From the NCBI GenBank assembly GCA_002269645.1, contig NIVC01000247.1, positions 372,001 to 436,000 of the forward strand: 64,000 nucleotides of DNA, written 5' to 3'. Position numbers and translations under genes: made by a program. Of this stretch, positions 15,418-56,374 are shown one piece after another. Each line of letters opens with the position of its first letter. Position 1 is the stretch's first letter. The notes under the pieces were generated by a model. That model was not told the DNA's origin and ran no database searches. It saw only the letters and a program-made list of their open reading frames with translations. The DNA is from Macrostomum lignano (Eukaryota).

Positions 15418-15509
15418 TATGTCTAGCATGCATTCATGAGAACACTGATACAGAGAAACAAAAATAGATACTGGTTTACGATTTCGAATTAAGAACTTCG
15501 ACAACTCAC

Positions 15510-15720
15510 CTTTGTGAACGCCAGTGAACTTGTCCTTGAGCACGGTCAGCTCCAGGATCGCGCCGAACTCCTCAAACAGCGGTCGCAGATCGTCCTCCTC
15601 CATGGACCGGGGGATCTGGCCGACGAACAGCTTGATGCGTTCCCCCGACTTGCCGCCTCCCGTGGCGGCGGAGGCCACCGCGAGTTCCTGTCCGTTCGAT
15701 GTGCTCACCCCGCTTACCAT
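15510..15720 (-). CDS. CELF: CELF3-6 (Bruno-like/UNC-75-type) RNA-binding protein, coding exon 1 (N-terminal half of RRM1)
   Basis: Translates [10 protein letters not shown]...[42 protein letters not shown](G), which carries RNP2 and matches the CELF3-6 subfamily rather than CELF1/2. It ends at donor AAAG|GTGAGT in phase 1. An upstream in-frame extension is possible. Confidence 0.92.
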
Positions 15721-21041: not shown

Positions 21042-22067
21042 TCAATAGCGCTTCTTCCGACTGCCGTAGCCGTTGTCGCTGTACTTATAGTTGCCATACT
21101 TGTCCTTAGGCGCCTTGTACAACAGCTTGCGCTTGCCGCCCTTCGGGCTCTCCAGGTAGTGACTAACCACGCGAGGCTTGCCGTACTTGTCGAGCTCTTC
21201 TTCGATCACCTCGTCGTAGTCGTAGTCGCCGCCATAGAAACTGTCGTAGTAGTCGTCGAATCCGTAGTCGTCGAAAAGATCGAGCAGGTCCAGATAATCT
21301 TCGCCGCTGTAGTCGTCAGCGTAGTCGTCGTCATAATAATTTAACTTATCGTAGCCCTTGGCGTAGCTGGGTTCATAGCCCTTGCCATAGCCATCGTCCT
21401 TGCCGTAGCCCTTGCCATAGCCATCGTCCTTGCCGTAGCTCTTGCCGTAGCTCTCGCGGTAGCTCTCGCGGTAGCCCTTGTCGTAGTCATCGTCCTTGCC
21501 GTAGCGCTTGCCGTAGCCCTTGTCGTAGTCATCGTCCTTGCTGTAACGCTTTCCGTAGCCCTTGTCATAGTCATCGTCCTTGCCGTAGCTCTTGCCGTAG
21601 CTCTCGCGGTAGCTCTTGCCGTAGCCCTTGTCGTAGTCATCGTCCTTGCCGTAGCGCTTGCCGTAGCCCTTGTCGTAGTCATCGTCCTTGCTGTAACGCT
21701 TGCCGTAGCCCTTGTCATAGACATCGTTCTTGCCGTAGCTCTTGCCGTAGCCCTTGTAGTCATCGTCCTTGCTGTAACGCTTGCCGTAGCCCTTGTCATA
21801 GCCATCGTCCTTGCCGTAGCTCTTGCCATACCCATCGTTCCTGTCGTAGCTCCGATCATAGGCCTTTTCATAGCCGTCGTCCTTGTCGTAGCCCTTGGCA
21901 TAGCGATCATCCTTGCCCTTACCGTAGCTCACACCCGAGCTGTAAGGTTGCTGATATCCATCGTAGGTGTTGGTGCCTCTGGCAATGCCATGATCTCCGT
22001 GCGACTCAACCAGGCCTAGCCCGCAAGCAAAGGCTAGCAGAGCCAGCCAATTTAAGCTAGTTCTCAT
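21042..22067 (-). CDS. Secreted Tyr/Gly/Asp/Lys-rich repeat protein (341 aa), eggshell/DOPA structural-protein-like; intronless and nested in TBATA intron 2
   Basis: Signal-peptide-like N-terminus MRTSLNWLALLAFACGLGLVES, then tandem YGKDDDYDKG/YGKRYSK repeats, an acidic Tyr/Asp segment and a basic C-terminus. Codon usage is coding-like (C/G third positions) and a TATA box lies upstream. Confidence 0.85.
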   Translation of the reverse strand: MRTSLNWLALLAFACGLGLVESHGDHGIARGTNTYDGYQQPYSSGVSYGKGKDDRYAKGYDKDDGYEKAYDRSYDRNDGYGKSYGKDDGYDKGYGKRYSKDDDYKGYGKSYGKNDVYDKGYGKRYSKDDDYDKGYGKRYGKDDDYDKGYGKSYRESYGKSYGKDDDYDKGYGKRYSKDDDYDKGYGKRYGKDDDYDKGYRESYRESYGKSYGKDDGYGKGYGKDDGYGKGYEPSYAKGYDKLNYYDDDYADDYSGEDYLDLLDLFDDYGFDDYYDSFYGGDYDYDEVIEEELDKYGKPRVVSHYLESPKGGKRKLLYKAPKDKYGNYKYSDNGYGSRKKRY

Positions 22068-23483: not shown

Positions 23484-23554
23484 CTGCGTTGTTTTTTATT
23501 GCGGGGTTTAGTGCTTGAGGGGCATTGTTGCAGTGTCCTCATTTGTGGCGCCAA

Positions 23555-24536
23555 ACGGGAGTGGGTTATAGATGTGGCGCCAAAAGGGTGTAGGTCCTAG
23601 ATGTGGCGCCAAAAGGGTGTGGATTATAGATGTGGTACTAAAGGGTGTGTGTTCTAGATGTGGTACTAAAGGGTGTGGGTTCTAGATGTGGTACTAAAGG
23701 GTGTGGGTTCTAGATGTGGTACTAAAGGATGTGGGTTTCAGATGTGGTACTAAAGGGTGTGGGTTCTAGATGTGGTACTAAAGGGTGTGGGTTCTAGATG
23801 TGGTACTAAAGGGTGTGGGTTCTAGATGTGGTACTAAAGGGTGTGGGTTCTAGATGTGGTACTAAAGGGTGTGGGTTCTAGATGTGGCGCCAAAAGGGAA
23901 GGGTGTGGGTTCTATATGTGGCGCCAAAAGGGCGTGGATTATAGATGTGGTGCCAAAAAGCTGTGGGTTCTAGATGTGGTACTAAAGGGTGTGGGTCCTA
24001 GATGTGGCGCCAAAAGGGTGTGGATTCTAGATGTGGCGTCAAAAAGCTGTGGGTTCTAGATGTGGTACTAAAGGGTGTGGTTTCTAGATGTGGCGCCAAA
24101 AGGGTGTGGGTTCTAGATGTGGCATCAAAAAGCTGTGGGTTCTAGATGTGGTACTAAAGGGTGTGGGTTCTAGATGTGGCGCCAAAAGGGAAGGGTGTGG
24201 GTTCTATATGTGGCGCCAAAAGGGCGTGGATTATAGATGTGGTGCCAAAAAGCTGTGGGTTCTAGATGTGGTACTAAAGGGTGTGGGTCCTAGATGTGGC
24301 GCCAAAAGGGTGTGGATTCTAGATGTGGCGTCAAAAAGCTGTGGGTTCTAGATGTGGTACTAAAGGGTGTGGTTTCTAGATGTGGCGCCAAAAGGGTGTG
24401 GGTTCTAGATGTGGCATCAAAAAGCTGTGGGTTCTAGATGTGGTACTAAAGGGTGTGGTTTCTAGATGTGGCGCCAAAAAGCTGTGGGTTCTAGATGTGG
24501 CGCCAAAAAGCTGTGGTTTCTAGATGTGGCGCCAAA
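23555..24536. repeat. 28-29-bp minisatellite TCTAGATGTGG(TACT/CGCC)AAAGGGTGTGGGT filling TBATA intron 1
   Basis: About 34 units, including a duplicated block of about 290 bp (identical ORFs at 23841 and within 24088-24351). Confidence 0.95.
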
Positions 24537-24679
24537 GGTAAAGGGGCTATTTAAGACTTCACAGAGGACTCCAAGTTTTTCTGTGTGGGTGTAGTCTAAA
24601 TGAACCTCTCGAAGCCACATTAAGAAAGTAACATCAAAGGTTGCTCTAAAAATGGTTTACAAATCAATCTGACCCTCAC

Positions 24680-29831: not shown

Positions 29832-31745
29832 ATGACGCAGGAACAATTCGGCTCGAGTCTGGCCGAATCGCAACGAGCTGCGTCTCTGTTCAGCCTCCTG
29901 GACACTGACGGATCCGGCTTCATCACCGAGTCGGACCTCGCTCGCTGCTGCGACGGTGATCTTAGGCCAGATGAGGTCCGACAGATCTTCGCCCAGTTGG
30001 ACGAAGACGGCGACGGCCGGGTTGACGCGGCCGACTTTCAGGCCGGTTTCAGGGCCATCGGCCTGTCCTTGGCCTCCCGCGAGTTGCACAACCAGCATCA
30101 GCATCATCACCAGCAGTTGGCAGCTGGCCAGGCTGGCAGCTCTCTGAGCATGAAGGCCTTCTCCCAGGAGCGGCTACTAGACGTTGACGAGCCCCAAGAG
30201 CTGCGACAGCCGCCGCAGCAGCGTAGCGGTGCCAGCGGAGCAGACCTCGAACACCAGCTGACAGAGGGACTTCAGCAGCTCAGCTGTCAAGAGAAAGTCT
30301 GCGAGCTGCACTGCCTGTTGCAGCGCCAATACCCCCAGCTTGTAGACAGCTTCGAGTCCATTATTGTCAGTGCAGCCAAGGAGGTCGGAGCTCAACGTCG
30401 CGAACGTCAACGACTCGAGGAGGCCTTTGCCAGAGCCAAGGCGGCCAACGAGAGCCACGTGCGCCAACTGGAGGAGGAGATGGAGATCCAGATGACCAAG
30501 TTGGAGCAGCGAGCGAGAGCGCAGGAAAGACGCCGGCTGGCCGAGCAATACCAGGACCTGCTGGACAGAAAGCAGGCCGAAATCGACGAGCTGCAGACGA
30601 TGATCGACGAACTGCAGCGTCGACGAAGCCGACAGGATGCCGCGGATGCCACTTCAGAGGTCGGGTTACGACGCAGCGTCGAAGAAACCAGGGAGCGAAA
30701 CCAGAGTCTCTTAGCGGACATGCAGAGGCTGGAGACGGCGCTAGCGGTAAGCCGCAGCGAGCTCGCTCGAATGCGCCAGGACCAGGAAGGCCGGACCCGG
30801 GAGCTGCTGGTCGAGAGAAGAAATCTTCAGACCTACCAGCGCGATCAGGAGCAGCTGGCACTACAGCTGCGGCTGCTACAGCAGGCCAACCGGAGTCTAA
30901 GCGACACCAACGACAGTCTGCGCTGCGCTCTTGAGCGCCAATACAGCGGCGTCAGCAGCGGTGGTGGCGGAGGTGGCGCTGTCACGCCGTCGTCCGGGCG
31001 AGGCAGCTTCTGTCGCCCCGTGAGCAGCGTTGGCACCGCCGCGGCCGCGGAGGAATTTTGCGAAGACGGGGTGGAGAGAAGAGTGGGTCTGAGCACCGAG
31101 CTAGATGAGGATGACGAGGAGGTTGACAGCGGAATGTCGACCTGTCGCGACGATCAGCGACAGTCCATGGCTTCTGCCGCCGACTTCCCGGATCACTTTG
31201 TAATCCCTTTTGGCGGCGGCGGCGGCGGCGGCAAAGGCTTTGGGTACGATTTTACCGACGAAGAAGTAGAAGAGGATGAAGAAGGTCTTCACTCCACCCG
31301 AGAGACTCTGGTCGATTGTGGAGCTCGGGAGCGGAGCTCGGCGACCGCTCAACAGCTGGACGATTGCTATATGTACTCCGAAGCGCAGGAGGACGGAGAA
31401 GTCATCCGTCGTCGCCAGCCGTTGCGCAGCAGTCGAAGGCATCGGCAGCTCCGTCGGTGTCCTCAGCCTCATCAGATGGGATATCCGGAGGAAGAGGAGG
31501 AGGGCACTGAAGTGGATCAGGCAGAGTCAATTGCTGAGTCGGTTGCCATGTCGCCACCCGAGCGCATGTTCAAGGTGGTGTTGGCAGGCGACGCGGCAGT
31601 GGGCAAGAGCAGCTTCATTGGACGATTTTGCGATGGTCGATTCTCTGCCAACACGACGGCCACGCTGGGCGTAGACTTCAAGACTCGGACGCTGGTAGTG
31701 GACGGTCGAGTTGTGGCCGTACAGCTTTGGGACACGGCCGGCCAG
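29832..31745 (+). CDS. RASEF: RASEF/Rab45 (EF-hand + coiled coil + Rab GTPase), exon 1
   Basis: Two EF-hands (DTDGSGFITESDL; DEDGDGRVDAADF), a long coiled coil, then Rab G1 GDAAVGKS, switch I TLGVDF and G3 WDTAGQ. Donor CAG|GTTAGA is phase 0. Confidence 0.92.
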
Positions 31746-31830
31746 GTTAGAAAAAACTTCCCTAACTAATTGTCCGCATATTTTCTGTCGAACGGCCTTT
31801 GCATTCTCCAGTTTCTTGTAGCCATTGTCA

Positions 31831-32840
31831 AACTCAAAAGTCACTCTCCAGTCTTAACTCGAGAGTCACTCTCCAGTACCAACTCTAGAGTCACTCTCCA
31901 GTCCCAACTCGAGAGTCACTCTCCAGTCCCAACTCGAGAGTCACTCTCCAGTACCAACTCTAGAGTCACTCTCCAGTCTTAACTCGAGAGTCACTCTCCA
32001 GTCCCAACTCGAGAGTCACTTTCCAGTACCAACTCTAGAGTCACTCTCCAGTCCCAACTCGAGAGTCACTCTCCAGTACCAACTCTAGAGTCACTCTCCA
32101 GTCCCAACTCGAGAGTCACTCTCCAGTACCAACTCTAGAGTCACTCTCCAGTCCCAACTCTAGAGTCACTCTCCAGTACCAACTCTAGAGTCACTCTCCA
32201 GTACCAACTCGAGAGTCACTCTCCAGTCCCAACTCGAGAGTCACTTTCCAGTCCCAACTCGAGAGTCACTCTCCAGTCTTAACTCGAGAGTCACTCTCCA
32301 GTACCAACTCGAGAGTCACTCTCCAGTCCCAACTCTAGAGTCACTCTCCAGTCCCAACTCGAGAGTCACTCTCCAGTCTTAACTCGAGAGTCACTCTCCA
32401 GTCCCAACTCGAGAGTCACTTTCCAGTACCAACTCTAGAGTCACTCTCCAGTCCCAACTCGAGAGTCACTCTCCAGTACCAACTCTAGAGTCACTCTCCA
32501 GTCCCAACTCGAGAGTCACTCTCCAGTACCAACTCTAGAGTCACTCTCCAGTCCCAACTCCAGAGTCACTCTCCAGTCCCAACTCTAGAGTCACTCTCCA
32601 GTCCCAACTCGAGAGTCACTCTCCAGTACCAACTCGAGAGTCACTCTCCAGTCCCAACTCGAGAGTCACTCTCCAGTCCCAATTCGAGAGTAACTCTCCA
32701 GTCCCAATTCGAGAGTCACTCTCCAGTCCCAATTCGAGAGTCACTCTCCAGTCTCAACCCGAGAGTCACTCTCCAATCTTAACTGGAGAGTAACTCTCCA
32801 GTCTCAAACCTAGAGTCACTCCACAGTCTCAACTCTAGAG
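31831..32840. repeat. 25-bp minisatellite CTCGAGAGTCACTCTCCAGTCCCAA, about 40 copies, in the RASEF intron
   Basis: Directly visible; begins about 85 nt after the donor. Confidence 0.95.
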
Positions 32841-34410: not shown

Positions 34411-34425
34411 TCGAACCATCGCCAG

Positions 34426-34851
34426 GAGCGCTTCCGCAGCATTGCCAAGTCCTACTTCCGTCGCGCAGACGGCGTGATCCTCATGTACGACTGCACCCAC
34501 GAACGTTCGTTCCTGAGCGCTCGCGACTGGATGGAGTCGATCCGGGATTGCGCCGAGCCCGGCATCCCCGTTGTGCTGGCCGGCAACAAGGCCGACCTTC
34601 GCGGTGGAGGCGGCACCGGGCGAGGCGTCGACGCATCGGAAGGCGCCCGCCTTGCCGAGTCGCTGGAGGCGGCGATGTTTGTGGAGACGAGCGCCGCGTC
34701 GGGCCTGGCCGTCAGCTCGACGGTGGAGCAGCTCTGCCGGTTGCTATGGGAACGAGAGGACGCAGAGTTGATGCGAGGCGGCGGTGGCGACAGCTCCGGC
34801 AGTGTTCAGCTGAAAGATGGCGCAGGAAAGAAACTGGGCTCCTGTTGCTGA
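34426..34851 (+). CDS. RASEF: RASEF/Rab45, exon 2 (rest of Rab domain, CC prenylation end)
   Basis: Acceptor GCCAG|GAG gives ERFRSIAKSYFRRADGVILMYD...GNKADL...ETSA...GSCC*. The total protein is about 779 aa. Confidence 0.92.
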   Translation, partial: ERFRSIAKSYFRRADGVILMYDCTHERSFLSARDWMESIRDCAEPGIPVVLAGNKADLRGGGGTGRGVDASEGARLAESLEAAMFVETSAASGLAVSSTVEQLCRLLWEREDAELMRGGGGDSSGSVQLKDGAGKKLGSCC

Positions 34852-36782: not shown

Positions 36783-37482
36783 ATGGGGGGGGGGCGCCAA
36801 GCCTGCTAGAAGGGGGAGAGGGGGCGCCAAGCCTGCTGGAGAGGGGGCGCCAAGCCTGCTGGAGGGGGGCGCCAAGTCTGCTGGAGGGGGGGGCGCCAAG
36901 CCTGCTGGAGAGGGGGCGCCAAGCCTGCTGGAGGGGGGGGGCGCCAAGCCTGCTAGAAGGGGGAGAGGGGGCGCCAAGCCTGCTGGAGAGGGGGCGCCAA
37001 GCCTGCTGGAGGGGGGCGCCAAGTCTGCTGGAGGGGGGGCGCCAAGCCTGCTGGAGAGGGGGCGCCAAGCCTGCTGGAGGGGGGGGGGCGCCAAGCCTGC
37101 TGTAATTGGGGCGCCAAGCCTGCTGGAGGGGGGCGCCAAGCCTGCTGGAGTGGGGCGGCGCCAAGCCTGCTGGAAGGGGGCGCCAAGCCTGCTGGAGGGG
37201 GGCGCCAAGCCTGCTGGAGGGGGGGGCGCCAAGCCTGCTGGAAGTGGGGGGGGGGGGCGCCAAGCCTGCTGGAAGGGGGGGGCGCCAAGCCTGCTGGAAG
37301 TGGGGGGGGGCGCCAAGCCTGCTGGAAGGGGGAGGGGGGGCGCCAAGCCTGCTGGAGTGGGGGGGGGCGCCAAGCCTGCTGGAAGGGGGGGCGCCAAGCC
37401 TGCTGGAAGTGGGGGGGCGCCAAGCCTGCTGGAAGGGGGAGGGGGGGGCGCCAAGCCTGCTGAAACGGGGGGGACGCCAAGG
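36783..37482. repeat. G-rich minisatellite G(n)GCGCCAAGCCTGCTGGA, about 30 copies
   Basis: Directly visible, with variable G-runs. Confidence 0.95.
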
Positions 37483-37649: not shown

Positions 37650-37885
37650 ACTGGTCAAATGGAGCAAGGGGCCAGGCACGGAAGAAAGACACATGGTGCC
37701 AGCTGGAAAGTGGTGTAGCTCGTGCACTGCGGAGCTGACGGCGCTGGAAGAGGCCTGCAGCTGGCTCTGCAGGCAGGAAAGAGTTGGGCATTCAGACTCT
37801 TGGTGACTGGTGGACGGAGGAGAAGGCGGCGCACGCCTTCTGGAAGTGGTTGAAGAGGAATGGCATAGGCACAGCTTGATCCGGC

Positions 37886-37920
<35 letters not shown>

Positions 37921-37935
37921 AAAAACAACAACAAA
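37650..37935 (+). mobile_element. Possible 5'-truncated non-LTR retrotransposon with (CAA)n tail
   Basis: RKELGIQTLGDWWTEEKAAHAFWKWLKRNGIGTA* resembles LINE ORF2 ends and is followed at once by (CAA)n. A near-identical AACAACAAAAACAACAACAA occurs on both sides. Confidence 0.35.
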
Positions 37936-39035
37936 GTACGCAGCCCCGCATGCACAGTCACAGTTAGAGCAGGGTGCGTCAGATGGCGCGCCGCAGAGCC
38001 TGAGGGTGGACGAAGTCTGCTCCGTTGACAGTGTCGGGCGCCCCGGCGTCACGCGTAGGAGGCTATACATTTTTTACTATATTAGAGAAGGCTTTTATGA
38101 GTACAATAATTGGTACTAAAGACGCAGCTCTACTCAAGTTTATCACGGGTCCGTACACAACTGATTCACTTGTTTTTACCTCTTATATCCACTACGAAGA
38201 TGCCAGCGTATTGAAAAGCATCCAATTTTCAAGCATAAATACCAAAATGTGGACAAGTTCGTATCGAAATACCTGACAGGTGTCATTGTTACTCACTCTT
38301 CTCGGTAATAACAGCCTTTCCCATCCTTTGTTTGCTCACGCTCCTTAACAATGTTTTCCCACGTTTTCTTGTGTGTATTTCCCCAGCGTTTGCCTTAGTG
38401 ACAATTATCTGAGGCAGAGAGGACAGAAAACTCCCAGTCTCTTCCCAGCAGAAACTGGGAAACCATCCTGCAGCTCGGAGCCAATCGCCAATCCTCCCAG
38501 AAAGGTGGGATTGCTTTTAGGGTAAGTTTCTTTACAGGCCAATAGCAAGGTAGGGTGGCTCTTCAGATTATATTTCGGCAGAGAAAGAAAATTGAAGTAC
38601 AAGCTGAGTACGAGACTCAATGTTTACAATTGAAAGCTGGGATAAATACAGGCAGACTTCCCCCTGGTGGATAAAGCTTCCTTGCTGTTGAGAGAAGCGA
38701 TAATACGAGCGTGAAGTTTGACAGCTAAAATTATCTGTCTCTTGAGTGGACTGTCATTAAAAGTCGCTTAGTTCACCCACCGATATATACGACTGTACAA
38801 GTGCTCACCCCATCTGGAACTATTCCCCTGTTATCCTCAAACTGCTTCCTCCCATCCCAAATTCTGCTCTGCTCGTGGACAAAAAAGCAGACCCGGCTTT
38901 CAAACCCACACTGTCCTATCACGCTCTGGTGAGGGACAGACAGGAAACGCAGCACGGGAGAGTGAGAGAGCAACTGGTGCACGAGTCTGGCCAGACAATA
39001 AAACTGTTTCTCCCCAGCGGCCTTCCCAGCTCAAC

Positions 39036-39188
39036 ATGTCAACTTCCTCAGCGGCTGTCCGAGGCTCCACAGCCGCAAGCAGTAAGCACCGACACCATCA
39101 CCACCGACATCATCACCACAGCTCGCAGCAGAAGGCACCAATGTCTCTCGCAGACTACATAGGCATGCGGAGGGGCGTCCAGAAACAG
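39036..39188 (+). CDS. Putative first coding exon of the uncharacterised repeat protein (His-rich N-terminus)
   Basis: Strong acceptor TTTCTCCCCAG| at 39017, AAC-ATG at 39036, translation MSTSSAAVRGSTAASSKHRHHHHRHHHHSSQQKAPMSLADYIGMRRGVQKQ, and donor CAG|GTAGGC in phase 0, compatible with the exon at 40567. Confidence 0.5.
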
Positions 39189-40029
39189 GTAGGCATAATT
39201 TTAGTATAATCAATAATTTGGAGAAATGTAAAATTTATTCAAATCAACATAGCATTTGAAATTCATTTCTTTGAGACAACGGTTTACCCAGAAAGCATCG
39301 TCTGCATGAAATTTCTGCTGCAGAAAAATTTCTTAAGCCCCCTTTCCATTTCTTCCAACTGTACTTGTTCTCTCTTTGCTTCTCTCATCCCGCGCCTCTC
39401 TTCCCCTCTCGCAGTTTCCTGGTATTTCAGCCCTGGTTCAGGCGGGGAGAATTGGCAGGTTAAACAGTGGGGGGGGGGGGGGACGGCAGCACCCGGCGAG
39501 GCCGGCCCGGCTTGGTAAAGAACAATGGCGGGGTGGCAAGAGCTGGCGGACTCCCCCCATCCGGGAGGTTGGCGGCCCTGAACTACGCACCTGAGCGTGG
39601 CAGGATGCAGCAAACTGTTTTTTTTCTGCTTGCCTTGGCAACCCGCTCTTTATGCCCGTGGAGTCGATGCATGTTGAAGCTGCACTATCCGCTGTTGGCT
39701 GCGAGAGAAAACGCTATGCATAATGGAAGGCTTTGATGAAGTGGAGAGACTGGGAAAACTGCTCTGGAAAGTAGACAAGAAAAAAGTCCAGCTTTTTTGT
39801 TTCATTTGTTTTTTGTGAAAATCGATAGAGTAAAAATACATTTTGAGCTTGGACTTTTATTTTGTAACAAAAGCTTACAAAAAAATGCTCCAAAAAGCCA
39901 ATAGCAGCAACAGTAAACGCTTTAAATTTGTTTTCTGTACGAGCGTAAAAAAGCAGAATCAAAACGAACGGGATTTGTGTGTTCTTTGATAGCGCAATGA
40001 AAATGACTTTTCTATTCGTAACATTTGAT

Positions 40030-40500
40030 CCAAAATATTCCAGCTAGGGTGGTCCGTAGGGTGGTCCGTAGACACAGCGGGGAGGGAGGCCAGGGTTGCC
40101 CATTCCGCTAGCCCCTGAAAGCCCGCAGACAGGCAGATGCGGGGGGCGGTCAGGGTGGTCCGCCGGTCCATCCCTTAGCGTGATCTTCCATAGGGAAGAA
40201 AGTGGCTCGTCTTGTCGCCCGGAGGAACTGGATGAGCCGTGGGGATGCTGTCGGACTTGCAGACCTCGTAAATAGACGGGTTTGGCCCGAGGTAGCGTAG
40301 CCGGTCTCTGCAGTAAAGAAAGGGCAGTGACAAACAAAATGCTGAGCATCTTCATTGTAATACTCGCATAAAGGGCAAAGTTCACTCTCGAGGTCGCCTC
40401 GAATGAAGTAGTGTCTGGCGAGGTAGCCATGGCCTGTAACCTCATGACACGGGCTCGAATATCCTTCCGATTTCGGTTCAGGACCTTCAAATTGTCTACC
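40030..40500 (-). mobile_element. 3' end of a LINE (RNase H-clade-type C-terminal CCHC zinc finger), frameshifted
   Basis: Across frames it reads LNRNRKDIR...TGHGYLARHYFIRGDLESELCPLCEYYNEDAQHFVCHCPFF...RLIQFLRATRR, the typical TGH-CxxC-ExxxH-xxxC LINE terminus. Confidence 0.75.
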
Positions 40501-40566
40501 AAATTTTCTTGTCACACTTTTACCTTTGTCTACCAAATTTCTACCGATTTGCACCCCACTCAGCAG

Positions 40567-42888
40567 GTGGAAGCCAAGCCCAACGTGAAAAAGATGCGAC
40601 TGGGCGGCACCTGGGCGGAGATCGAGCGAGCCGAGCGAGAAGCGGCTCAGGCTGAGTCACAACAAACGGTTGGCAGCAAGAAGACCATGCGCATCGGAAA
40701 CGAGAGCTGGCACGAGAAACAGGCCAGTAGTGAGAAACAGGCCGCGGTTGTTGAAGAGGAACGCGTAGGAACGAAGAAGGTCATGCGGGTTGGCAGCGAA
40801 AACTGGCACGAAAAGCAGGCGGTCGCTGCTAACAATGACGTGGTGGAGGAGAAGACTGGCACTAAAAAGGTCATGCGGGTTGGCAGTGAGAACTGGCACG
40901 AGAAGCAGAAGACAGTTGTTCAAGCAAACACGCTCGCAACTCGGGTTGGCACCCGAAAAAAGATGCGCATTGGAAACGAGAACTGGCACGAGAACCAACC
41001 GACGGCCACTCAAGAAGCTGTCATTAAGGAAGAGAAAGAAGAGAAAGTCGGAACTAGGAAGAGCATGAGGATCGGCAGTGAGAACTGGCACGAGAAACAG
41101 ACGGTAGTTGCCGCTCTTGCGGTTCAAGAGAAGGAAGAAGATAAGGTCGGAACCAGGAAGAGCATGAGGATCGGCAGTGAGAACTGGCACGAGAAGCAGG
41201 AGGCTGTTGTCGAGCAGAGAAACGAGCGTCTGTCCCCACGAGGAAGGAAGATCATTCTAGAACCAGTGGAGCAGACATCTGAGGTTGTGCTGGAAACCCA
41301 GAAAGCAGAGAAGGTGAAACAGGAGGACAAGCGAGTCGCTGAAAAGGCTCAAGCCAGAGACGCTACTGTAATTCAAGTCACAGAGAAGGCTGAGCAGCGA
41401 AAGCATCTTGAACCGATTGTCCAACAGAAGACGGGAACAGTTATTCAGGTTCAGGAAGAAAAGAAAATTGTTCTGCAACAAGAACGAAAAGAGCCTTCCC
41501 AAGTTGAGGTAAAGGCAGAAGCAAAGGCTGAAGTGAAGCAAATGGAGAAAGAGAAAGTCGTTTCCAAGGTTGAAGACAAGACCGAAGCTAAGGAGAAGCA
41601 GAAAATTGAGGTTAAAGCCGAGGTTAAAGCCAAGGAGAAGCAAAATTTTGACAATAAAGGCGTCGTTGTCGCTGCAGCAGTAGCACCAAAGGTTGAGGTT
41701 AAAGCCGAGGACAAAACGAAAGCTGAGGTCAAGGTTGAGGCAAAGCAAAAAGCCGAGGTCAAGGCCGAGGTCAAGGCTGAGGAGAAAAAGAAAGTTGAGG
41801 TCAAAGCCGAAGAAAAGCAGAAAAATGAAAGTAAGGGTTTTGCTTTGGCCGTTGGTGTCTCAGCAAACAAGGCTGAAGAAAAGGTCGAAGAAAAAAAGAA
41901 GGCTGAAGTCAAAGCCGAGGTCAAGGCCGAGGAGAAAAAGAAGGCTGAGGTCAAGGCCGAAGTGAAAGCCAAAGACAAGCAGAAGGTTGAAAACAAGGGC
42001 TTTGCTTTGGCAGTCGGTGTGTCAGCAAACAAAACTGAAGAAAAAAAGAAGGCCGAGGTCAAGGCCGAGGTCAAGGCTGAAGAGAAGCAGAAAGTTGAAA
42101 GCAAGGATTTGGCTTTGGCGGTCGGTGTCTCAGCGAACAAGGCTGAGGCAAAAGTAGAAGACAAAAGTAAATCAGAGATCAAGGCTGAAGTCAAGGCAGA
42201 AGAGAAAAAGGAGTCTGACAGCAAGGATCTATCAGTAGGTGTCGGCATTTCCGCAAGCAAGACGGAAGCAAAGGTTGAAGAGAAGAGCAAAGCAGAGATT
42301 AAGGTTGAAGCGAAGAATGAGGACGTAAAAAAGACAGAAGAAAACGCTATGGCTATTTCTGTAGCCGCAAGCAAAGCTGAGAGCAAGATTGAGGAGCAGG
42401 TCAAGGCTGAAGTCAAGGCTGAAGAGATATCTGCCAAGGTCGAGACTAGCTCGGAAGAGAAAACTGAGACGGAAGAGAAGACAGATGTAAAAGTTGAGGA
42501 GAAATCTGAAGCTGCATCGGTAAGCGTAACTGCAGACGTCAGTAGCAAGTCCGACACCAAGTCTGAGACCAAATCTGAGAAGCAATCGAAATCGTCATCG
42601 AAATCGGTGAGCAAGTCGGAAAGTCAGTCAGTGAGTCGCACTCGCACAGAAGCCACGGATGAGCTTGGAGGCCTGATAAAGATGCTGGACAGTCAGGTGG
42701 ACCGTCAGCTAAACAGCATCAACGGTCCATCGGAGCCGCCAGCCCCTGACCCGAAAGTGGACGCCGCCATGCAGAAGATTTTGCACAAAGATTTTCAAAG
42801 CAAAGTTGACGCGTTCATTAGCAGCAGCGAGTACGACGCCAATGGAGGCTTTTTTGAGTCGTGCAAAAAACTCGCTAAAGAGATCTGA
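40567..42888 (+). CDS. Uncharacterised repeat protein, main exon (MRxGxExWHEKQ repeats, Lys/Glu/Ala/Val-rich region, short C-terminal domain)
   Basis: A 2.3-kb open frame with synonymous divergence between peptide repeats. A tandem CAG-CAG acceptor lies at 40563/40566. The ORF-track start at 40411 lies in a LINE remnant/intron. Confidence 0.85.
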   Translation: MEAKPNVKKMRLGGTWAEIERAEREAAQAESQQTVGSKKTMRIGNESWHEKQASSEKQAAVVEEERVGTKKVMRVGSENWHEKQAVAANNDVVEEKTGTKKVMRVGSENWHEKQKTVVQANTLATRVGTRKKMRIGNENWHENQPTATQEAVIKEEKEEKVGTRKSMRIGSENWHEKQTVVAALAVQEKEEDKVGTRKSMRIGSENWHEKQEAVVEQRNERLSPRGRKIILEPVEQTSEVVLETQKAEKVKQEDKRVAEKAQARDATVIQVTEKAEQRKHLEPIVQQKTGTVIQVQEEKKIVLQQERKEPSQVEVKAEAKAEVKQMEKEKVVSKVEDKTEAKEKQKIEVKAEVKAKEKQNFDNKGVVVAAAVAPKVEVKAEDKTKAEVKVEAKQKAEVKAEVKAEEKKKVEVKAEEKQKNESKGFALAVGVSANKAEEKVEEKKKAEVKAEVKAEEKKKAEVKAEVKAKDKQKVENKGFALAVGVSANKTEEKKKAEVKAEVKAEEKQKVESKDLALAVGVSANKAEAKVEDKSKSEIKAEVKAEEKKESDSKDLSVGVGISASKTEAKVEEKSKAEIKVEAKNEDVKKTEENAMAISVAASKAESKIEEQVKAEVKAEEISAKVETSSEEKTETEEKTDVKVEEKSEAASVSVTADVSSKSDTKSETKSEKQSKSSSKSVSKSESQSVSRTRTEATDELGGLIKMLDSQVDRQLNSINGPSEPPAPDPKVDAAMQKILHKDFQSKVDAFISSSEYDANGGFFESCKKLAKEI

Positions 42889-49428: not shown

Positions 49429-49449
49429 GTGAGACATTGTGGACTTCGA

Positions 49450-50522
49450 TAATCACCCCCTCAGACACCTTGATAATCGCCCCTCAGATACCTTGATAAT
49501 CGCCCCTCAGGCACCTTGATGATCGCCCCCCCCCTCAGACACCTTGATAATCACCCCTCAGATACCTTGATAATCGCCCTCAGACACCTTGATAATCGCC
49601 CCTCAGACACCTTGATAATCGCCCCTCAGACACCTTGATAATCGCCCCTCAGATACCTTGATAATCGCCCTCAGACACCTTGATAATCGCCCCTCAGACA
49701 CCTTGATAATCGCCCCTCAGATACCTTGATAATCGCCCTCAGACACCTTGATAATCGCCCCTCAGACACCTTGATAATCGCCCCTCAGACACCTTGATAA
49801 TCGCCCCCTCAGACACCTTGATAATCGCCCCTCAGACACCTTGATAATCGCCCCTTAGAAACCTTGATAATCACCCCTCAGATACTTTGACAATCACCCC
49901 CTCAGACACCTTGATAATCGCCCCTCAGATACCTTGATAATCGCCCTCAGACACCTTGATAATCACCCCTCAGACACCTTGATAATCGCCCCCTCAGACA
50001 CCTTGATAATCGCCCCCCGCAGACACTTTGATAATCGCCCTCTTAGACACCTTGATAATCGCCCCATTCAGACACCTTAATAATCGCCCCCTCAGACACT
50101 TTGATAATCGCCCCTTTCAGACACCTTGATAATCGCCCCCTCAGACACCTTGATAATCGCCCCCTCAGACGCCTTGATAATTGCCCCCTCAGACACTTTG
50201 ATAATCGCCCCTTTCAGACACCTTGATAATCGCCCCCCTCAGACACCTTGACAATCGCCCCCTCAGATACCTTGATAATCACCCCTCAGACACCTTGATA
50301 ATCACCCCTCAGACACCTTGATAATCGCCCCCTCAGACACCTTGATAATCGCCCCCCCCCTCACACACCTTGATGATCGCCCCCCCCCCCTCAGACACCT
50401 TGATAATCGCTCCTCAAACTCAAACACCTTAATAATCGCCCCAGACACTTTAATAATCGCCCTCTCAGACACCTTGATAATCGCCCCATTCAGACACCTT
50501 AAAAATCGCCCCTCAGACACAT
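49450..50522. repeat. 22-26-bp minisatellite CAGACACCTTGATAATCGCCCCT, about 45 copies, in PDE12 intron 1
   Basis: Directly visible. Confidence 0.95.
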
Positions 50523-50624
50523 TGACTGTTAAAAATATTTAGAGTATCATACTACTTACTATTCTTATATGATAGTAGAATAATTGGCCTATGCAAAGCA
50601 ACCATTTACAAAAATCATTGCTAG

Positions 50625-51316
50625 GCCAGCATCAACAATCACCTGGAGTCGCGCATGCGATCCAAGTTAAAACGGAAACAACGGAGACAGCAAGACAAAG
50701 AGCCGCGCGATTCTTCTGAGCAGTCTGATGAGCAAAATAATGGTGCCAACTCAGAACTGAGCTCTCATCCCTGCTATGTTAGGGATTTGGCTATTCTAGA
50801 TTCGGCTGGCAACCCCTTGGATACCAATACTGCTCTGTGCGGCGATGCCTTCTGCAGCGGGCACACCCTCAGTTTGAACTCGGGTTTAATCACCTACCAA
50901 ATGCTTGTAGACCCGTGCCTGATTTTGTGCTGCAAGCTCACCAGCCAGTTGCTAAGCGGATTTCCTCTCCACTGCGATCTACAGTTGGAGTCCTGCTCAG
51001 AATGTGAACGAATCTGGGAGCTTTCAAGCAGCCTGACTAAACCGAACTGGACTGAGTTCAGCCGGTCCAGGTGTCCGACTTTACCTGTTGATTCCGCTGA
51101 TTGCTTTGTCCGGTTAACTGCGGTGCCACCAGATGGAGGACTGCAGTTCCAGCAGACATTCGGGCCAGTGGCCAATGCTCTGAACAGTTACGTGTCCACC
51201 AGGCACGCTTTCACCCCGGCTGTGACCGCTTCGGACACTGTCCGAGTTGTGTCCTACAATCTACTGGCTAATCTCTATGCCGACTCTGACTATTCCAGAA
51301 ATCAGCTGTTTCCATG
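50625..51316 (+). CDS. PDE12: PDE12 exon 2
   Basis: Acceptor CTAG|GCC; ends with VRVVSYNLLANLYADSDYSRNQLFP(W). Donor TG|GTGCGT is phase 2. Confidence 0.9.
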
Positions 51317-51344
51317 GTGCGTAGCTGGCTGTTGCCCACTTGCA

Positions 51345-51792
51345 GCAATCTGATTAGTTGAGGGGGGAATTGGCTAAAGAATCTGATTGGCTGATAGGGG
51401 AATTAGCCAAAGAATCTGATTGGTTGGGGGCGGAAATGGCCAATGAATCTTATTGGTTCAGAGGGGAATGGGCCAGTGAATCTGATTGGTTGAGAGAGGG
51501 AAATCGACCAAAGAATCTGATTGGTTGAGCCAGGAAGTTGGCCAAAGAATCTGATTGGTTGGGGGGGGGGGTGGCCAATGAATCTGATTGGTTGAGAGAG
51601 GGAAATTGACCAAAGAATCTGATTGGTTGAGCCAGGAAGTTGGCCAAAGAACCTGATTGGTTGGGGGGAATTGAGCGAATAATCTGATTGGTTGAGCCAG
51701 GAAGTTGTCCAAAGAATCTGATTGATTGGGGGGAATTGAGCGAAAAATCTGATTGGTTGAGCCGAGAAGTTGGCCAAAGAATCTGATTGGGC
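51345..51792. repeat. 31-34-bp minisatellite with AATCTGATTGGTT core in PDE12 intron 2
   Basis: Directly visible; about 14 units. Confidence 0.92.
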
Positions 51793-51837
51793 AATAGTGA
51801 ACCCATCAACAAAGGCAACCCATGCACGGCGCCGCAG

Positions 51838-52512
51838 GTGCGACCCCAACTACCTGTCCATGTCCTACCGGAAGTGCCTGATATTTCGCGAGCTCAGCGG
51901 CTACAACGCCGATCTGGTGGCCTTGCAAGAGGTGGACGAGCCGCTGTTCCGGTCTGGCGGGCTGGCCGAGTTCCTTGAGCACGAGTGCGGCCTGTCCGGT
52001 CTCAGCCAGATGAAACTCGGACAGGACGGCAAGCCGGCCCAAGAGGGCCTGGCGCTGTTCTATCGTACCAGCCGGTTTGACTTGGCCGAGGACCGGTCTC
52101 TGCCGTCGCTAAATCAGTATCTGGACTCGACGGAGTCCCTGGCGCCGCTGTCCTCGGCAGTCAAAGCGAACGAGAAGTTCTTAGAAACCTGGCAGGCTCG
52201 GGGCCAGTGCGCTCAGGTGCTGATACTGCGGTGCAGGGACTCGCCTGGCCGCTACCTGTGCGCCTGCACCACTCACCTGTTTTGGTATCCGTCGGCTAAT
52301 CTCGTCAGGCTGCTGCAGACTCACCTGGTGCTGCATCATCTGGATCAGATCAAGAGAGAGTACTCGGCTAGGGGTGACCAGCTGGCCATTGTGCTGGCTG
52401 GCGATTTCAACAGCATGCCGGACAGGGGTCCCTACTGGCTGACCACCAGGGGACATCTGGCCGCTGAGCATGCCGACTGGTTCAGCCCTGGGCGGGAGGC
52501 CATGATTGACAG
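51838..52512 (+). CDS. PDE12: PDE12 exon 3 (EEP nuclease core)
   Basis: Acceptor CCGCAG|G. It carries YNADLVALQEVD, THLFW and LAGDFNS motifs. Donor AG|GTGAGA is phase 2. Confidence 0.92.
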
Positions 52513-52547
52513 GTGAGAGAACCGGGACGCTTCTGAGTCCCTAGTAG

Positions 52548-53194: not shown

Positions 53195-53569
53195 CCTCAT
53201 TGGTGCGCCTCCTGCTTTTTCTAGCTGTTTATGAATTATTAACTTGAATTTTAGCTGATAAAAAACTATTTTGTGTGAAAGATTTATACTACTCAAAATA
53301 GTATAATTTAGTTAAGAAATATATATAATCAAAGTTGTAGTTTTTGGTCCATTGTTATTTTTATTTTTTTTGCAAAAATATTTCGCTTGATTATTAACAG
53401 TGTCCTGTATTTTCTAACGGATATGGAGGGCTTGCAGAAAATATCTAATCTTGCATACTAGATGTAAGTTCTAAAATTGCTGTCTAAATCTGCGGGATTC
53501 TGTGCAGTTGAAAGTGCAAAAAATCTTAGCAAATTAATGTATGAACTTATGAGGATGTATAGCCATTCT

Positions 53570-54770
53570 CTCAAATCCTCAATCAGTATGTGCAGTCACT
53601 CACAGATCCTCAATCAAGATGTACAGTCACTCTCCCAGATCATCAATCAGTATTGGCAGTCACTCTCCCAGATCATCAATCAGTATTGGCAGTCACTCTC
53701 CCAGATCCTCAATCAAGATGTACAGTCACTTTCCCAGATCCTCAATCAGTATTGGCAGTCACTTTCTTAGATCCTCAATCAAGATGTACAGTCACTTTCC
53801 CAGATCCTCAATCAAGATGTACAGTCACTCTCCCAGATCCTCAATCAAGATGTACAGTCACTCTCCCAGATCCTCAATCAAGTTGTACAGTCACTTTCCC
53901 ATATCCTCAATCAAGATGTACAGTCACTCTCCCAGATCCTCAATCAAGATGTACAGTCACTCTCCCAGATCCTCAATCAAGTTGTACAGTAACTTTCCCA
54001 GTTCCTCAATCAAGATGTACAGTAACTTTCCCAGATCCTCAATCAGTATTGGCAGTCACTTTCCCAGATCCTCAATCAAGATGTACAGTAACTTTCCCAG
54101 ATCCTCAATCAAGATGTACAGTAACTTTCCCAGATCCTCAATCAAGATGTACAGTCACTTTCCCAGATCCTCAATCAGTATTGGCAGTCACTTTCCCAGT
54201 TCCTCAATCAAGATGTACAGTCACTTTCCCAGATCCTCAATCAAGATGTACAGTCACTTTCCCAGATCCTCAATCAAGATGTACAGTCACTTTCCCAGAT
54301 CCTCAATCAAGATGTACAGTCACTCTCCCAGATCCTCAATCAGTATTGGCAGTCACTTTCCCAGATCCTCAATCAAGATGTACAGTAACTTTCCCAGATC
54401 CTCAAACAGTATTGGCAGTCACTTTCCCAGATCCTCAATCAAGATGTACAGTCACTTTCCTAGATCCTCAATCAAGATGTACAGTCACTTTCCCAGATCC
54501 TCAATCAAGATGTACAGTAACTTTCCCAGATCCTCAATCAAGATGTACAGTCACTCTCCCAGATCCTCAATCAGTATTGGCAGTCACTTTCCCAGATCCT
54601 CAATCAGTATTGGCAGTCATTTTCCCAGATCCTCAATCAAGATGTACAGTCACTCTCCCAGATCCTCAATCAAGTTGTACAGTCACTCTCAGATCCTCAA
54701 TCAAGTTGTACAGTCACTCTCACAGATCCTCAATCAAGATGTACAGTCACTTTCCCAGATCCTCCATCAG
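53570..54770. repeat. 33-bp minisatellite AGATCCTCAATCAAGATGTACAGTCACTTTCCC, about 36 copies, between convergent genes
   Basis: Directly visible; the period is divisible by 3, which explains the artefactual 11-aa-repeat ORFs. Confidence 0.95.
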
Positions 54771-55328: not shown

Positions 55329-55889
55329 CTGAAATTTAAATGCTTTTTTCCAGCTTTGCGATTCAAACAATTCAGTTCACAATTCAAGAATGTTGAACAT
55401 TCGCTTTCGATAAAGAAACGTCGACAGTGTTGAAGAAAGGTTCAATTTGGAGAGCTGGAGGACCAATACATTCAGTGAGAGCTAAGCATTTGTCTTCCAA
55501 AAAGGAAATATTTTGAAGGCCAAAAGAAGTCATGGCTATCACTGGTCTAGATATCTTGTCCAGTTTGCTATTGTAAAGTTTGAAGGACTACGAATTGGCT
55601 TCGCGGATCAGAATTTGCCGACCCCTGATCTACCGCATAACAATGGCCAGATGAGATGAGATGATGAAGGAAATAGAGGAAAAAAGAAGAGAGGAGTTTA
55701 GATAGAAGAGAGCTGAGAATACGTATGCGTATACAGACCTTGAGCAGGCCGGATTGCTATTGTGGAGTTACAATGGGCCCTGAGGGCCGGATAGAGCGGC
55801 TTCATGGACAGAATTTAGTCCGCGGAAGTGTTCCTAATCAAGTCAAGCTTAATTAAACATTCTTCCCATTGAATTCGCGAGCAGCTCAC

Positions 55890-56202
55890 GGTTTTGTCTC
55901 TCTTGCACGCTTAGAATCCTTGTCAATACTCGGAACGCCTCCTCGTTGTTTGAAGACTTCTTCTCTGCAGAGTCCTTGTCTACCGACGCCGCAGCCGATG
56001 CAGCGTCCTTGGCAACGCGACAAGCCTCGTCGTGCAGCTTCAAGGGAGTGTCGCTAATTTGCTTTGAGAAAACCTCCTTTCGCTGACGATTCAATTCCTT
56101 CAGTAGCTGCTCCTCAGGGCTCGCTGACGGACTGCTAGACTCTGACACTGCTGCTTGCTGTTGTCGAATTTTGTTTAACTGTTGTTCGTTCTGATCGTGA
56201 AC
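55890..56202 (-). CDS. Uncharacterised MGCxxS-motif protein, exon 2
   Basis: Acceptor CCACAG|GTT, helical Q/E/K-rich translation, donor C|GTGAGC (phase 1). Unspliced read-through would stop at 55849. Confidence 0.6.
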
Positions 56203-56374
56203 CTGTGGTTTGAATTGTATCCAGCTAGACACATAAGTCAACAAAGGCGCCTCGGAAATTTCGCACATCATTTAAAAGATGAGGAAGTATACCTTTGTTA
56301 ATATAGACGAACTAAAGAAGCTACTAGAAATTTTAGTTCAAACAGTCTCAGCAAGCCCATGTACAGTTTAAATA

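What the first reader, a model, noticed from the sequence alone, without database searches (positions are those of the whole stretch)
39036..42888. Unrecognised ~824-aa protein built from two novel repeat modules
Seen: a His-rich N-terminus; six copies of GT(K/R)KxMR(I/V)G(S/N)E(N/S)WHE(K/N)Q about 26-30 aa apart plus a degenerate KKMRLGGTW; a long KAEVKAEEK charged region punctuated by about six hydrophobic K(G/D)(F/L)ALAVGVSANK-type motifs; a Ser/Lys/Thr stretch; and a roughly 75-aa non-repetitive helical C-terminus. The peptide repeats are conserved despite synonymous DNA changes, indicating protein-level selection. There is no signal peptide or transmembrane segment. Inference: an intracellular multivalent scaffold (cytoskeletal, sperm or muscle) with an undescribed Trp/His short linear motif.
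Basis: partly seen in the sequence, partly recalled or inferred. Interest (0 to 1): 0.7.

Follow-up and report, generated by a model that had tools for sequence, protein, structure and literature searches.

The report
Orphan disordered repeat protein gene
This is a real two-exon animal gene for a 91-kDa, mostly unstructured protein built from two kinds of selected peptide repeats; it matches no described family, and its function can only be inferred.

Summary
Exon 1 (39036-39188) joins exon 2 (40564-42888) through good splice sites to give an 825-aa protein. It has these parts:
- an N-terminal His tract;
- seven evenly spaced 18-aa motifs of the type VGT(K/R)KxMR(I/V)G(S/N)ENWHEKQ, one of them degenerate;
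- a 337-aa Lys/Glu/Ala/Val region carrying seven small hydrophobic patches;
- a Ser/Lys/Thr stretch;
- a three-helix C-terminus.

Both repeat types are under purifying selection (motif cores pS 0.74, pN 0.12), and every repeat spacing is a multiple of three.

I found no relative in Pfam, PDB sequences, Foldseek/PDB, a motif profile against 1.84 billion proteins, word-indexed searches, metagenome scans or literature strings. A control search with a conserved neighbouring gene also found nothing in the word-indexed database, so that particular absence is weak evidence.

The central region is newly characterised here. Polar and non-polar residues alternate strictly, opposite charges sit at i+2 and like charges at i+4, and kappa is about 0.03. 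That excludes a single alpha-helix (SAH) and matches RADA16/EAK16-type self-complementary strands or an expanded coil.

The best reading is a cytoplasmic multivalent tether or scaffold. Its partner, tissue and expression are untested. Interest is moderate to low.

The parts
39036..39188 (+). Exon 1: 51 codons, from the ATG to the donor CAG|GTAGGC. Encodes MSTSS...HRHHHHRHHHH...MSLADYIGMRRGVQKQ.
39087..39119 (+). His tract HRHHHHRHHHH (aa 18-28), written by a 15-nt imperfect tandem repeat.
39189..40563 (+). Intron of 1375 nt, GT...AG. It holds a retroelement-like ORF remnant on the minus strand at 40150-40554.
40564..42888 (+). Exon 2: 774 codons plus the stop. The frame has no stops, against 11-66 in the other five frames.
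40576..40629 (+). Motif copy 1, degenerate: KPNVKKMRLGGTWAEIER (aa 56-73).
40669..40722 (+). Motif copy 2: VGSKKTMRIGNESWHEKQ (aa 87-104).
40765..40818 (+). Motif copy 3: VGTKKVMRVGSENWHEKQ (aa 119-136).
40855..40908 (+). Motif copy 4: TGTKKVMRVGSENWHEKQ (aa 149-166).
40945..40998 (+). Motif copy 5: VGTRKKMRIGNENWHENQ (aa 179-196).
41047..41100 (+). Motif copy 6: VGTRKSMRIGSENWHEKQ (aa 213-230).
41146..41199 (+). Motif copy 7: VGTRKSMRIGSENWHEKQ (aa 246-263).
41200..41499 (+). Non-repetitive charged linker (aa 264-363). One long helix is predicted at aa 289-333.
41500..42510 (+). Central polyampholyte (aa 364-700): 82 K+R and 81 D+E. It contains 14 runs of strict polar/non-polar alternation, mostly (K-A/V-E-V/A)n, in roughly 36-40-aa modules.
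41659..41685 (+). Hydrophobic patch 1: GVVVAAAVA (aa 417-425).
41836..41871 (+). Hydrophobic patch 2: GFALAVGVSANK (aa 476-487).
41998..42033 (+). Hydrophobic patch 3: GFALAVGVSANK (aa 530-541).
42106..42141 (+). Hydrophobic patch 4: DLALAVGVSANK (aa 566-577).
42226..42261 (+). Hydrophobic patch 5: DLSVGVGISASK (aa 606-617).
42343..42375 (+). Hydrophobic patch 6: NAMAISVAASK (aa 645-655).
42511..42654 (+). Ser/Lys/Thr-rich stretch (aa 701-748). It opens with hydrophobic patch 7, AASVSVTA.
42655..42885 (+). Acidic (pI 4.75), non-repetitive C-terminal module (aa 749-825). Three helices are predicted at about aa 745-770, 781-805 and 813-824.

Best explanation
This is a genuine two-exon gene of an invertebrate-type animal genome. 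It encodes a 91.5-kDa, largely disordered, probably cytoplasmic protein with no detectable relatives.

Shown:
- The coding frame and both repeat types are kept by selection on the protein.
- The chain has a modular layout.
- The central region has a strict two-residue amphipathic and charge alternation.

Inferred mechanism: the protein acts as a multivalent tether.
- Seven evenly spaced 18-aa basic/aromatic motifs (net +2 each, invariant K, M, R, G, W, E) are separated by acidic Ala/Val spacers (mostly net -2). They dock several copies of one partner at once. The partner is most plausibly the repeating subunits of a polymer such as a cytoskeletal filament.
- The 337-aa perfectly mixed polyampholyte acts as an extended, non-collapsing spacer. 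Its seven Ala/Val/Gly/Ser patches and its (K-A-E-V)n runs could pair as beta strands between chains.
- The Ser/Lys stretch is a likely phosphorylation switch.
- The acidic three-helix C-terminus anchors the protein or dimerises it.
For: The gene is real:
- Zero stops in 774 codons, against 11-66 in the other frames.
- Canonical splice sites in phase 0.
- All repeat spacings are multiples of 3.
- Motif cores give pS 0.74 and pN 0.12. Central modules 1-4 give pS 0.58-0.97 and pN 0.06-0.27, with 7 different spellings of AEVK.
- GC3 of 0.57-0.64 lies within the 0.46-0.78 range of neighbouring exons.
- No flanking terminal repeats and no paralogue in the window.

Multivalent array in a disordered chain:
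- Motif spacing of 30-34 aa; six columns are invariant across all seven copies.
- Cores are net +2 or +3, and five of the six spacers are net -2.
- 578 of 774 exon-2 residues have pLDDT below 50, and the whole motif array is predicted as coil.

Extended spacer:
- Fraction of charged residues 0.48, net charge +1.
- Kappa about 0.03, against 0.16 for shuffled sequences on the same scale.
- Uniformly mixed charges give expanded chains (PMC7503639, read).

Beta-type stickers:
- The hydrophobicity periodicity peaks at 180 degrees (z 10.7) and dips at 100 degrees (z -4).
- Opposite charges at i+2 give z 12.6.
- The same binary pattern is found in EAK16 and RADA16, which assemble into cross-beta fibres (PMC7889856, read).

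C-terminal module: three helices, the first with pLDDT 91-95.
Against: - No partner, tissue, transcript or orthologue was available, so every functional step is inference from sequence.
- AlphaFold2 predicts helices, not strands, for two central stretches (aa 490-524 and 636-676, pLDDT 50-80).
- The motif array is nearly neutral overall (pI 9.3). Known microtubule-binding repeat regions are strongly basic (my own knowledge).
- No homology to known filament-binding repeats: Pfam found nothing, and hhalign against MAP2/MAP4 repeats gave probability 0.3%.
- The frame is open upstream of the ATG, so further 5' exons are possible.
Confidence: 0.4

Rival explanations
1. It is a self-assembling structural material. 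The (K-A-E-V)n runs and the Ala/Val/Gly/Ser patches form cross-beta sheets, giving a fibre or hydrogel. This could be intracellular, or secreted if an upstream signal-peptide exon was missed. The His tract would provide metal cross-links.
For: - The two-residue periodicity has z 10.7, with 14 strictly alternating runs of 7-13 aa.
- Charges alternate + - + - along one face, as in RADA16-I and EAK16, which form cross-beta nanofibres (PMC7889856).
- Like charges at i+4 (z 8.0) disfavour a helix.
- The frame is open upstream of the ATG, with acceptor-like sites.
- His-rich ends and Ala/Gly/Ser/Val beta blocks occur in byssal and silk-type proteins (my own knowledge).
Against: - No signal peptide in the model, and only one unconvincing candidate exon in the 4.2 kb upstream.
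- AlphaFold2 shows no strand anywhere.
- The alternating runs are short and broken by EEKKK/KEKQK blocks.
- Very well mixed polyampholytes tend to stay soluble and expanded (PMC7503639).
- This reading does not explain the most strongly conserved part, the Trp/His motif array.
Confidence: 0.2
2. It is a nucleic-acid or chromatin-associated protein. The basic/aromatic motifs (Lys/Arg plus Trp/His) would contact RNA or DNA, and the Lys-rich and Ser/Lys-rich regions would add non-specific affinity.
For: - Each core has four Lys/Arg plus one Trp and one His.
- The N-terminal 51 aa have pI 11.8, and the Ser/Lys stretch has pI 9.6.
Against: - The protein as a whole has balanced charge (168 K+R against 154 D+E).
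- No known nucleic-acid-binding domain or motif in Pfam.
- Every motif carries two conserved Glu.
Confidence: 0.1
3. It is a hydrophilic stress protectant of the LEA or tardigrade CAHS type: an abundant disordered Lys/Glu/Ala-rich protein that gains structure or gels when water is lost.
For: - GRAVY of -1.0, Lys/Glu/Ala/Val making up 55% of residues, and predicted disorder.
Against: - No LEA-family hit in Pfam.
- The periodicity is 2 residues, not the helical 11-mer typical of LEA proteins, and the 100-degree signal is depleted.
- It does not account for a conserved Trp/His motif array.
Confidence: 0.07
4. It is not a functional protein but a repeat-expanded open frame, either untranscribed or a decaying or very young gene.
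For: - No transcript evidence could be obtained.
- No homologue was found anywhere.
- The window is about one quarter minisatellite, and some of these also give long spurious ORFs.
Against: - pN/pS is about 0.16 between motif copies whose synonymous sites are near saturation.
- The non-repetitive linker and C-terminus, about 180 codons together, are also open.
- Only one of the six frames is open, whereas the satellite ORFs at 1041-5010 are open in several frames.
- The splice sites fit in phase.
Confidence: 0.07

Closest known systems
Tau/MAP2/MAP4 tubulin-binding repeats (Pfam PF00418)
   Same: - A tandem array of 18-aa cores at a period of about 31 aa in a disordered chain.
- A basic-x-Gly-Ser tetrapeptide (R-I/V-G-S/N) followed by Asn and His.
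- A long charged 'projection' region elsewhere in the protein.
   Different: - There is no PGGG ending.
- The spacing between Ser, Asn and His is shorter.
- Trp and two Glu are conserved.
- The array is N-terminal and nearly neutral.
- Pfam gives no hit.
- Profile-profile comparison aligns only 4 columns, at probability 0.3%.

This is an analogy of layout only, not membership.
Ionic self-complementary peptides EAK16 (from yeast zuotin) and RADA16-I
   Same: - Strict alternation of a small hydrophobic residue with a charged one.
- Charges alternate + and - along the polar face: (K-A-E-V)n against (R-A-D-A)n (PMC7889856).
   Different: - Here the runs are 7-13 aa long and embedded in an 825-aa protein.
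- They are interrupted by EEKKK-type blocks and flanked by uncharged patches.
- Assembly into beta sheets is untested, and AlphaFold2 does not predict it.
ER/K single alpha-helix (SAH) spacers
   Same: A long Glu/Lys-rich region lying between functional ends.
   Different: SAH domains need opposite charges at i+4 (my own knowledge). Here i+4 is enriched for like charges (78 against 39 expected, z 8.0), and the opposite charges sit at i+2.
Titin PEVK and neurofilament or MAP side-arm regions
   Same: A low-complexity Glu/Val/Lys-rich segment, probably an extended entropic spacer. The tetrapeptide AEVK resembles PEVK.
   Different: - Only 1 Pro in 337 aa.
- No Ig or Fn3 domains, no rod domain and no KSP repeats.
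- No Pfam hit.

Membership tests
Tau/MAP2/MAP4 tubulin-binding repeat family | Match to the family profile (Pfam PF00418). | tested here: not met
   No hit at E <= 10 for the whole protein or for the repeat segment alone.
Tau/MAP2/MAP4 tubulin-binding repeat family | Each repeat core ends in Pro-Gly-Gly-Gly. | tested here: not met
   No PGGG anywhere in the protein; the cores end in WHEKQ.
Tau/MAP2/MAP4 tubulin-binding repeat family | Tandem repeats with a period of 31-32 aa and a K-x-G-S tetrapeptide. | tested here: inconclusive
   The period is 30-34 aa. The tetrapeptide is R-(I/V/L)-G-(S/N/G), with Arg in place of Lys and Ser in only 4 of 7 copies.
Ionic self-complementary beta-sheet peptides (EAK16/RADA16 class) | Strict alternation of hydrophobic and charged residues, with alternating charge signs. 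| tested here: met
   There are 14 alternating runs of 7-13 aa. The 180-degree periodicity has z 10.7. Opposite charges at i+2 number 103 against 39 expected.
Ionic self-complementary beta-sheet peptides (EAK16/RADA16 class) | Forms stable beta-sheet fibres in solution. | not testable with these tools
   Needs CD, FTIR, thioflavin-T or electron microscopy on the recombinant region. AlphaFold2 without an alignment shows coil and helix only.
ER/K single alpha-helix (SAH) domain | Enrichment of oppositely charged pairs at i+4, and at i+3. | tested here: not met
   At i+4 there are 34 opposite pairs (39 expected) and 78 like pairs (z 8.0). At i+3 there are 46 opposite pairs (z 1.4).
Titin-type PEVK region | Proline-rich 26-28-aa PPAK repeats set within an Ig/Fn3 giant protein. 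| tested here: not met
   1 Pro in aa 364-700 and no Ig or Fn3 domains.
Actin-binding short repeats (nebulin, Xin, calponin-type) | Match to the respective Pfam repeat profiles. | tested here: not met
   No Pfam family at E <= 10 for the whole protein. The repeat segment gave only two unrelated sub-threshold hits.
LEA group 3 proteins | Match to LEA profiles and an amphipathic-helix 11-mer periodicity. | tested here: not met
   No Pfam hit. The helical 100-degree periodicity is depleted, z -4.
Secreted silk, cement or byssus-type structural proteins | N-terminal signal peptide. | tested here: inconclusive
   None in the model. An upstream scan found one weak candidate only. The frame is open upstream of the ATG, so a missed exon cannot be excluded.

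The most novel reading that the evidence does not exclude
Two things would be new together. First, the 18-aa Trp/His motif array would be a previously undescribed class of filament- or lattice-binding repeat. Second, the central region would be a natural, selected counterpart of the designer RADA16 peptide: a protein whose (K-A-E-V)n strands and Ala/Val/Gly/Ser patches let tethered chains zip reversibly into a cross-beta gel or fibre inside cells.
Probability: 0.1. Interest if true: 0.7.

Novelty: new variant of a known kind. Interest (0 to 1): 0.35.

Why it matters
If the gene is expressed, it adds a family-less protein whose two repeat types are clearly kept by selection. One is a Trp/His-containing short motif presented seven times at a fixed pitch. 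It can be tested directly as a new docking motif with peptide pull-downs and Trp-to-Ala controls.

The other is a natural sequence with the binary pattern that materials scientists designed into self-assembling peptides. It could show how cells use or restrain such sequences.

Lineage-restricted repetitive disordered proteins are common in animal genomes, and nothing here links this one to an open question. The practical value is that it is a well-delimited, testable orphan rather than a surprise.

Tried and rejected
- **Pfam.** The whole protein gave 0 families. Five separate segments gave only sub-threshold noise: Phage_tail_fib at 0.078, Phasin at 0.011, and others, all far below their cut-offs.
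- **PDB by sequence.** The N-terminal query matched only His-tags. The motif profile gave 0 hits. The C-terminus gave E > 1 noise.
- **Foldseek against the PDB** with the C-terminal model: 0 matches.
- **Word-indexed protein collection.** The N-terminal 295 aa and the C-terminal 90 aa both gave nothing. The control with the NDUFA10-like neighbour also gave nothing, so I discount this negative.
- **Motif profile against 1.84 billion representative proteins:** 0 hits at E <= 0.001.
- **Back-translated motif scans of metagenome contigs,** for the motif pair and for the C-terminus: 475 and 412 pattern matches, none confirmed by tblastn.
- **Literature strings** for six target peptides: 0 papers.
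- **Tau/MAP homology** is rejected.
- **A third repeat in the linker** (LEPxxQ...TVIQV) is rejected: 54 of 500 shuffles reach the same score.
- **Transposable-element origin** is rejected: no flanking direct or inverted repeats. The retroelement remnant lies in the intron on the other strand.
- **Paralogues in the window:** none.
- **RNA genes in the window:** Rfam and tRNA scans found nothing.
- **Source organism.** It could not be identified. The neighbours indicate an animal, and the NDUFA10 exon scores best against PDB entries 8esw and 8b9z. I recall those as insect complex I.


Full report
**What is there**

The window is animal nuclear DNA. It has spliced genes, many 20-35-nt minisatellites, and neighbours that include an EF-hand/Rab GTPase, an RRM exon, a PDE12-like nuclease and an NDUFA10 exon.

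At the reported site, an ATG at 39036 opens a 51-codon exon that ends at a CAG|GTAGGC donor. A 1375-nt intron follows. It carries a retroelement-like ORF remnant on the opposite strand, at 40150-40554. The intron ends in a pyrimidine-rich tract and ...cactcag|CAG at 40563/40564. Both junctions are in phase 0. Exon 2 then runs 774 codons to the stop at 42886-42888.

The product is 825 aa and 91.5 kDa. Lys, Glu, Ala and Val make up 55% of its residues.

**Check of the observation**

- The His tract is at aa 18-28.
- Six near-identical 18-aa motifs have cores starting at aa 87, 119, 149, 179, 213 and 246. A degenerate seventh starts at aa 56.
- Across all seven copies, K, M, R, G, W and E are invariant.
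- The Lys/Glu-rich centre holds three canonical hydrophobic motifs, (G/D)(F/L)ALAVGVSANK, and four degenerate ones.
- A Ser/Lys/Thr stretch covers aa 701-748.
- The last 77 aa are non-repetitive.
- No hydrophobic run exceeds 10 aa, so the model has no signal peptide or membrane segment.

**Is it a real coding sequence?**

The reading frame has no stop in 774 codons. The other five frames have 24, 66, 11, 12 and 37. The nearby satellite ORFs behave differently: they are open in several frames at once.

All repeat spacings in exon 2 are multiples of three: 96, 90, 90, 102 and 99 nt, and 12, 30, 42, 108 and 120 nt.

Between the six good motif cores, synonymous sites are close to saturation (pS 0.74) while non-synonymous sites are not (pN 0.12, ratio 0.16). 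Their DNA is only 70-81% identical.

The four best central modules give pS 0.58-0.97 against pN 0.06-0.27. The 13 AEVK tetrapeptides are encoded by 7 different 12-mers.

GC3 and codon choices lie within the range of neighbouring exons.

The 'expanded non-coding repeat' reading is unlikely.

Two points remain open:
- No transcript data could be reached.
- The frame stays open for at least 60 codons upstream of the ATG, with acceptor-like AG sites at 39017 and 39030. An extra 5' exon is therefore possible. A crude scan of the 4.2 kb back to the upstream gene found no convincing signal-peptide exon.

**Relatives**

I found none.
- Pfam gave no family for the whole protein and only sub-threshold noise for five separate segments.
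- PDB sequence searches returned His-tags or nothing.
- Foldseek against the PDB with the C-terminal model returned nothing.
- A profile of the seven motif units, searched with HMMER against 1.84 billion representative proteins, gave no hit at E <= 0.001.
- Word-indexed searches with the N-terminal 295 aa and the C-terminal 90 aa gave nothing.
- Two back-translated scans of metagenome contigs gave pattern matches but no confirmed relative.
- Peptide strings are absent from the paper library.

One caveat matters. The same word-indexed search run as a control with the conserved NDUFA10-like exon next door also found nothing. That collection therefore reaches this organism's lineage poorly, and its silence says little.

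The exhaustive profile search and Pfam are the stronger negatives. I could not run a control for the former. The fair statement is 'matches no described family', not 'unique to this lineage'.

**Anatomy and physics**

AlphaFold2 without an alignment leaves 578 of 774 exon-2 residues below pLDDT 50, and the whole motif array is coil. It predicts helices at these places:
- aa 68-81, and a short one at aa 261-270;
- aa 289-333;
- aa 490-524 and aa 636-676;
- three in the C-terminus, at about aa 745-770, 781-805 and 813-824. The first reaches pLDDT 91-95.

In the motif array, each core is net +2 (+3 for the degenerate copy). Five of the six spacers are Ala/Val-rich and net -2, so the array is close to neutral (pI 9.3).

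The central region (aa 364-700) has 82 basic and 81 acidic residues.
- Its hydrophobicity oscillates with a period of two residues. The signal at 180 degrees has z 10.7 against shuffles, while the helical 100-degree signal is depleted (z -4).
- There are 14 runs of 7-13 residues with strict polar/non-polar alternation, such as KAEVKAEVKAE.
- Opposite charges are enriched at i+2 (103 against 39 expected, z 12.6).
- Like charges are enriched at i+4 (78 against 39 expected, z 8.0).
- A kappa-type segregation index is about 0.03.

Three consequences follow.
- This is not an ER/K single alpha-helix, which needs opposite charges at i+4 (my own knowledge).
- Chains with uniformly mixed charges are expanded (PMC7503639).
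- The binary pattern (K-A-E-V)n is that of RADA16-I, (R-A-D-A)n, and resembles EAK16 from yeast zuotin. Both assemble into cross-beta nanofibres (PMC7889856).

The patches (F/L)ALAVGVSA also alternate, with larger and smaller non-polar residues.

**Most likely mechanism**

I commit to a multivalent tether, at about 0.4 confidence.
- The evenly pitched basic/aromatic motifs engage several copies of one partner at once. The partner is most plausibly successive subunits of a polymer such as a cytoskeletal filament.
- The polyampholyte keeps the ends apart as an expanded spacer. It can associate weakly with neighbouring chains through its strand-like runs and hydrophobic patches.
- The Ser/Lys stretch is a plausible phosphorylation site cluster.
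- The acidic helical C-terminus anchors the protein or dimerises it.

Only the layout, the selection and the sequence physics are shown. Binding, extension and assembly are inferred.

Rivals, with rough weights:
- a self-assembling cross-beta material, secreted if an exon is missing (0.2);
- a nucleic-acid-associated protein (0.1);
- a hydrophilic stress protectant (0.07);
- a non-functional open frame (0.07).

**Comparison with known families**

The layout recalls tau/MAP2/MAP4: 18-aa cores at a pitch of about 31 aa, a basic-x-Gly-Ser tetrapeptide followed by Asn and His, and a long charged region. Membership fails on every test.
- There is no Pfam hit.
- There is no PGGG.

Nebulin, Xin, calponin and LEA profiles are likewise silent. 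A PEVK-type region is excluded by one proline in 337 residues. The EAK16/RADA16 resemblance meets the sequence criteria, but assembly itself cannot be tested here.

**Verdict**

The cytoskeletal, sperm or muscle role is untested.

It is a new variant of a familiar kind, a lineage-restricted repetitive disordered protein. Interest is 0.35. The most novel reading still open combines a new lattice-binding motif with a natural RADA-type self-assembling spacer. I give it about 0.1.

Noticed in passing
window 21042-22067 (-): A 341-aa ORF with a signal-peptide-like start (MRTSLNWLALLAFACGLGLVES) and Tyr/Gly/Lys/Asp repeats (GYGKRYSKDDDYDK, 150-nt period). All 48 Lys codons are AAG. It looks like a secreted adhesive, cuticle or matrix-type protein. 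It had no Pfam family, no exact record in the collection and no paper strings.
   Followed up: partly
window 29832-31769 and 34423-34731 (+): A large Rab GTPase gene: EF-hand pair, coiled coil and Rab domain, similar in layout to CRACR2A/Rab44. Its 645-codon first exon is unusual. The Rab domain is split by an intron that holds a 25-nt minisatellite at 31831-32840.
   Followed up: partly
window 40150-40554 (-): A retroelement-like ORF remnant containing CPLCEYYNEDAQHFVCHCPFF, inside the target gene's intron. It abuts the acceptor and accounts for the open frame upstream of 40564. It had no Pfam hit.
   Followed up: partly
window 50655-52516 (+): A PDE12-like (2',5'-phosphodiesterase 12) endonuclease/exonuclease/phosphatase gene, with E 1.6e-29 to PDB 4z0v. 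A 33-nt minisatellite sits in its intron at 51347-51790.
   Followed up: partly
window 61000-61512 (+): The first exon of an NDUFA10 (complex I 42-kDa subunit) gene. Its best PDB matches are 8esw and 8b9z (E about 1e-9), ahead of the mammalian chains (about 5e-6). The word-indexed protein search found no relative at all, which shows how poorly that collection covers this lineage.
   Followed up: partly
window 1108-4243, 5390-9593, 23552-24538, 31831-32840, 36788-37481, 49448-50525, 53554-54769 and others: Minisatellites with 20-35-nt units and up to 150 copies fill roughly a quarter of the window. Several create long spurious ORFs in more than one frame.
   Followed up: no
window 15382-15843 (-) and 55849-56271 (-): An RRM-containing exon of CELF/Bruno type ([23 protein letters not shown]) and a weak PEX14-like central-domain exon (E 0.0011, below the cut-off).
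   Followed up: no
window 37810-38070: A CAG/CTG trinucleotide tract, which reads as poly-Gln on one strand and poly-Leu on the other. It lies about 1 kb upstream of the target's ATG, just after the G-rich minisatellite at 36788-37481.
   Followed up: no
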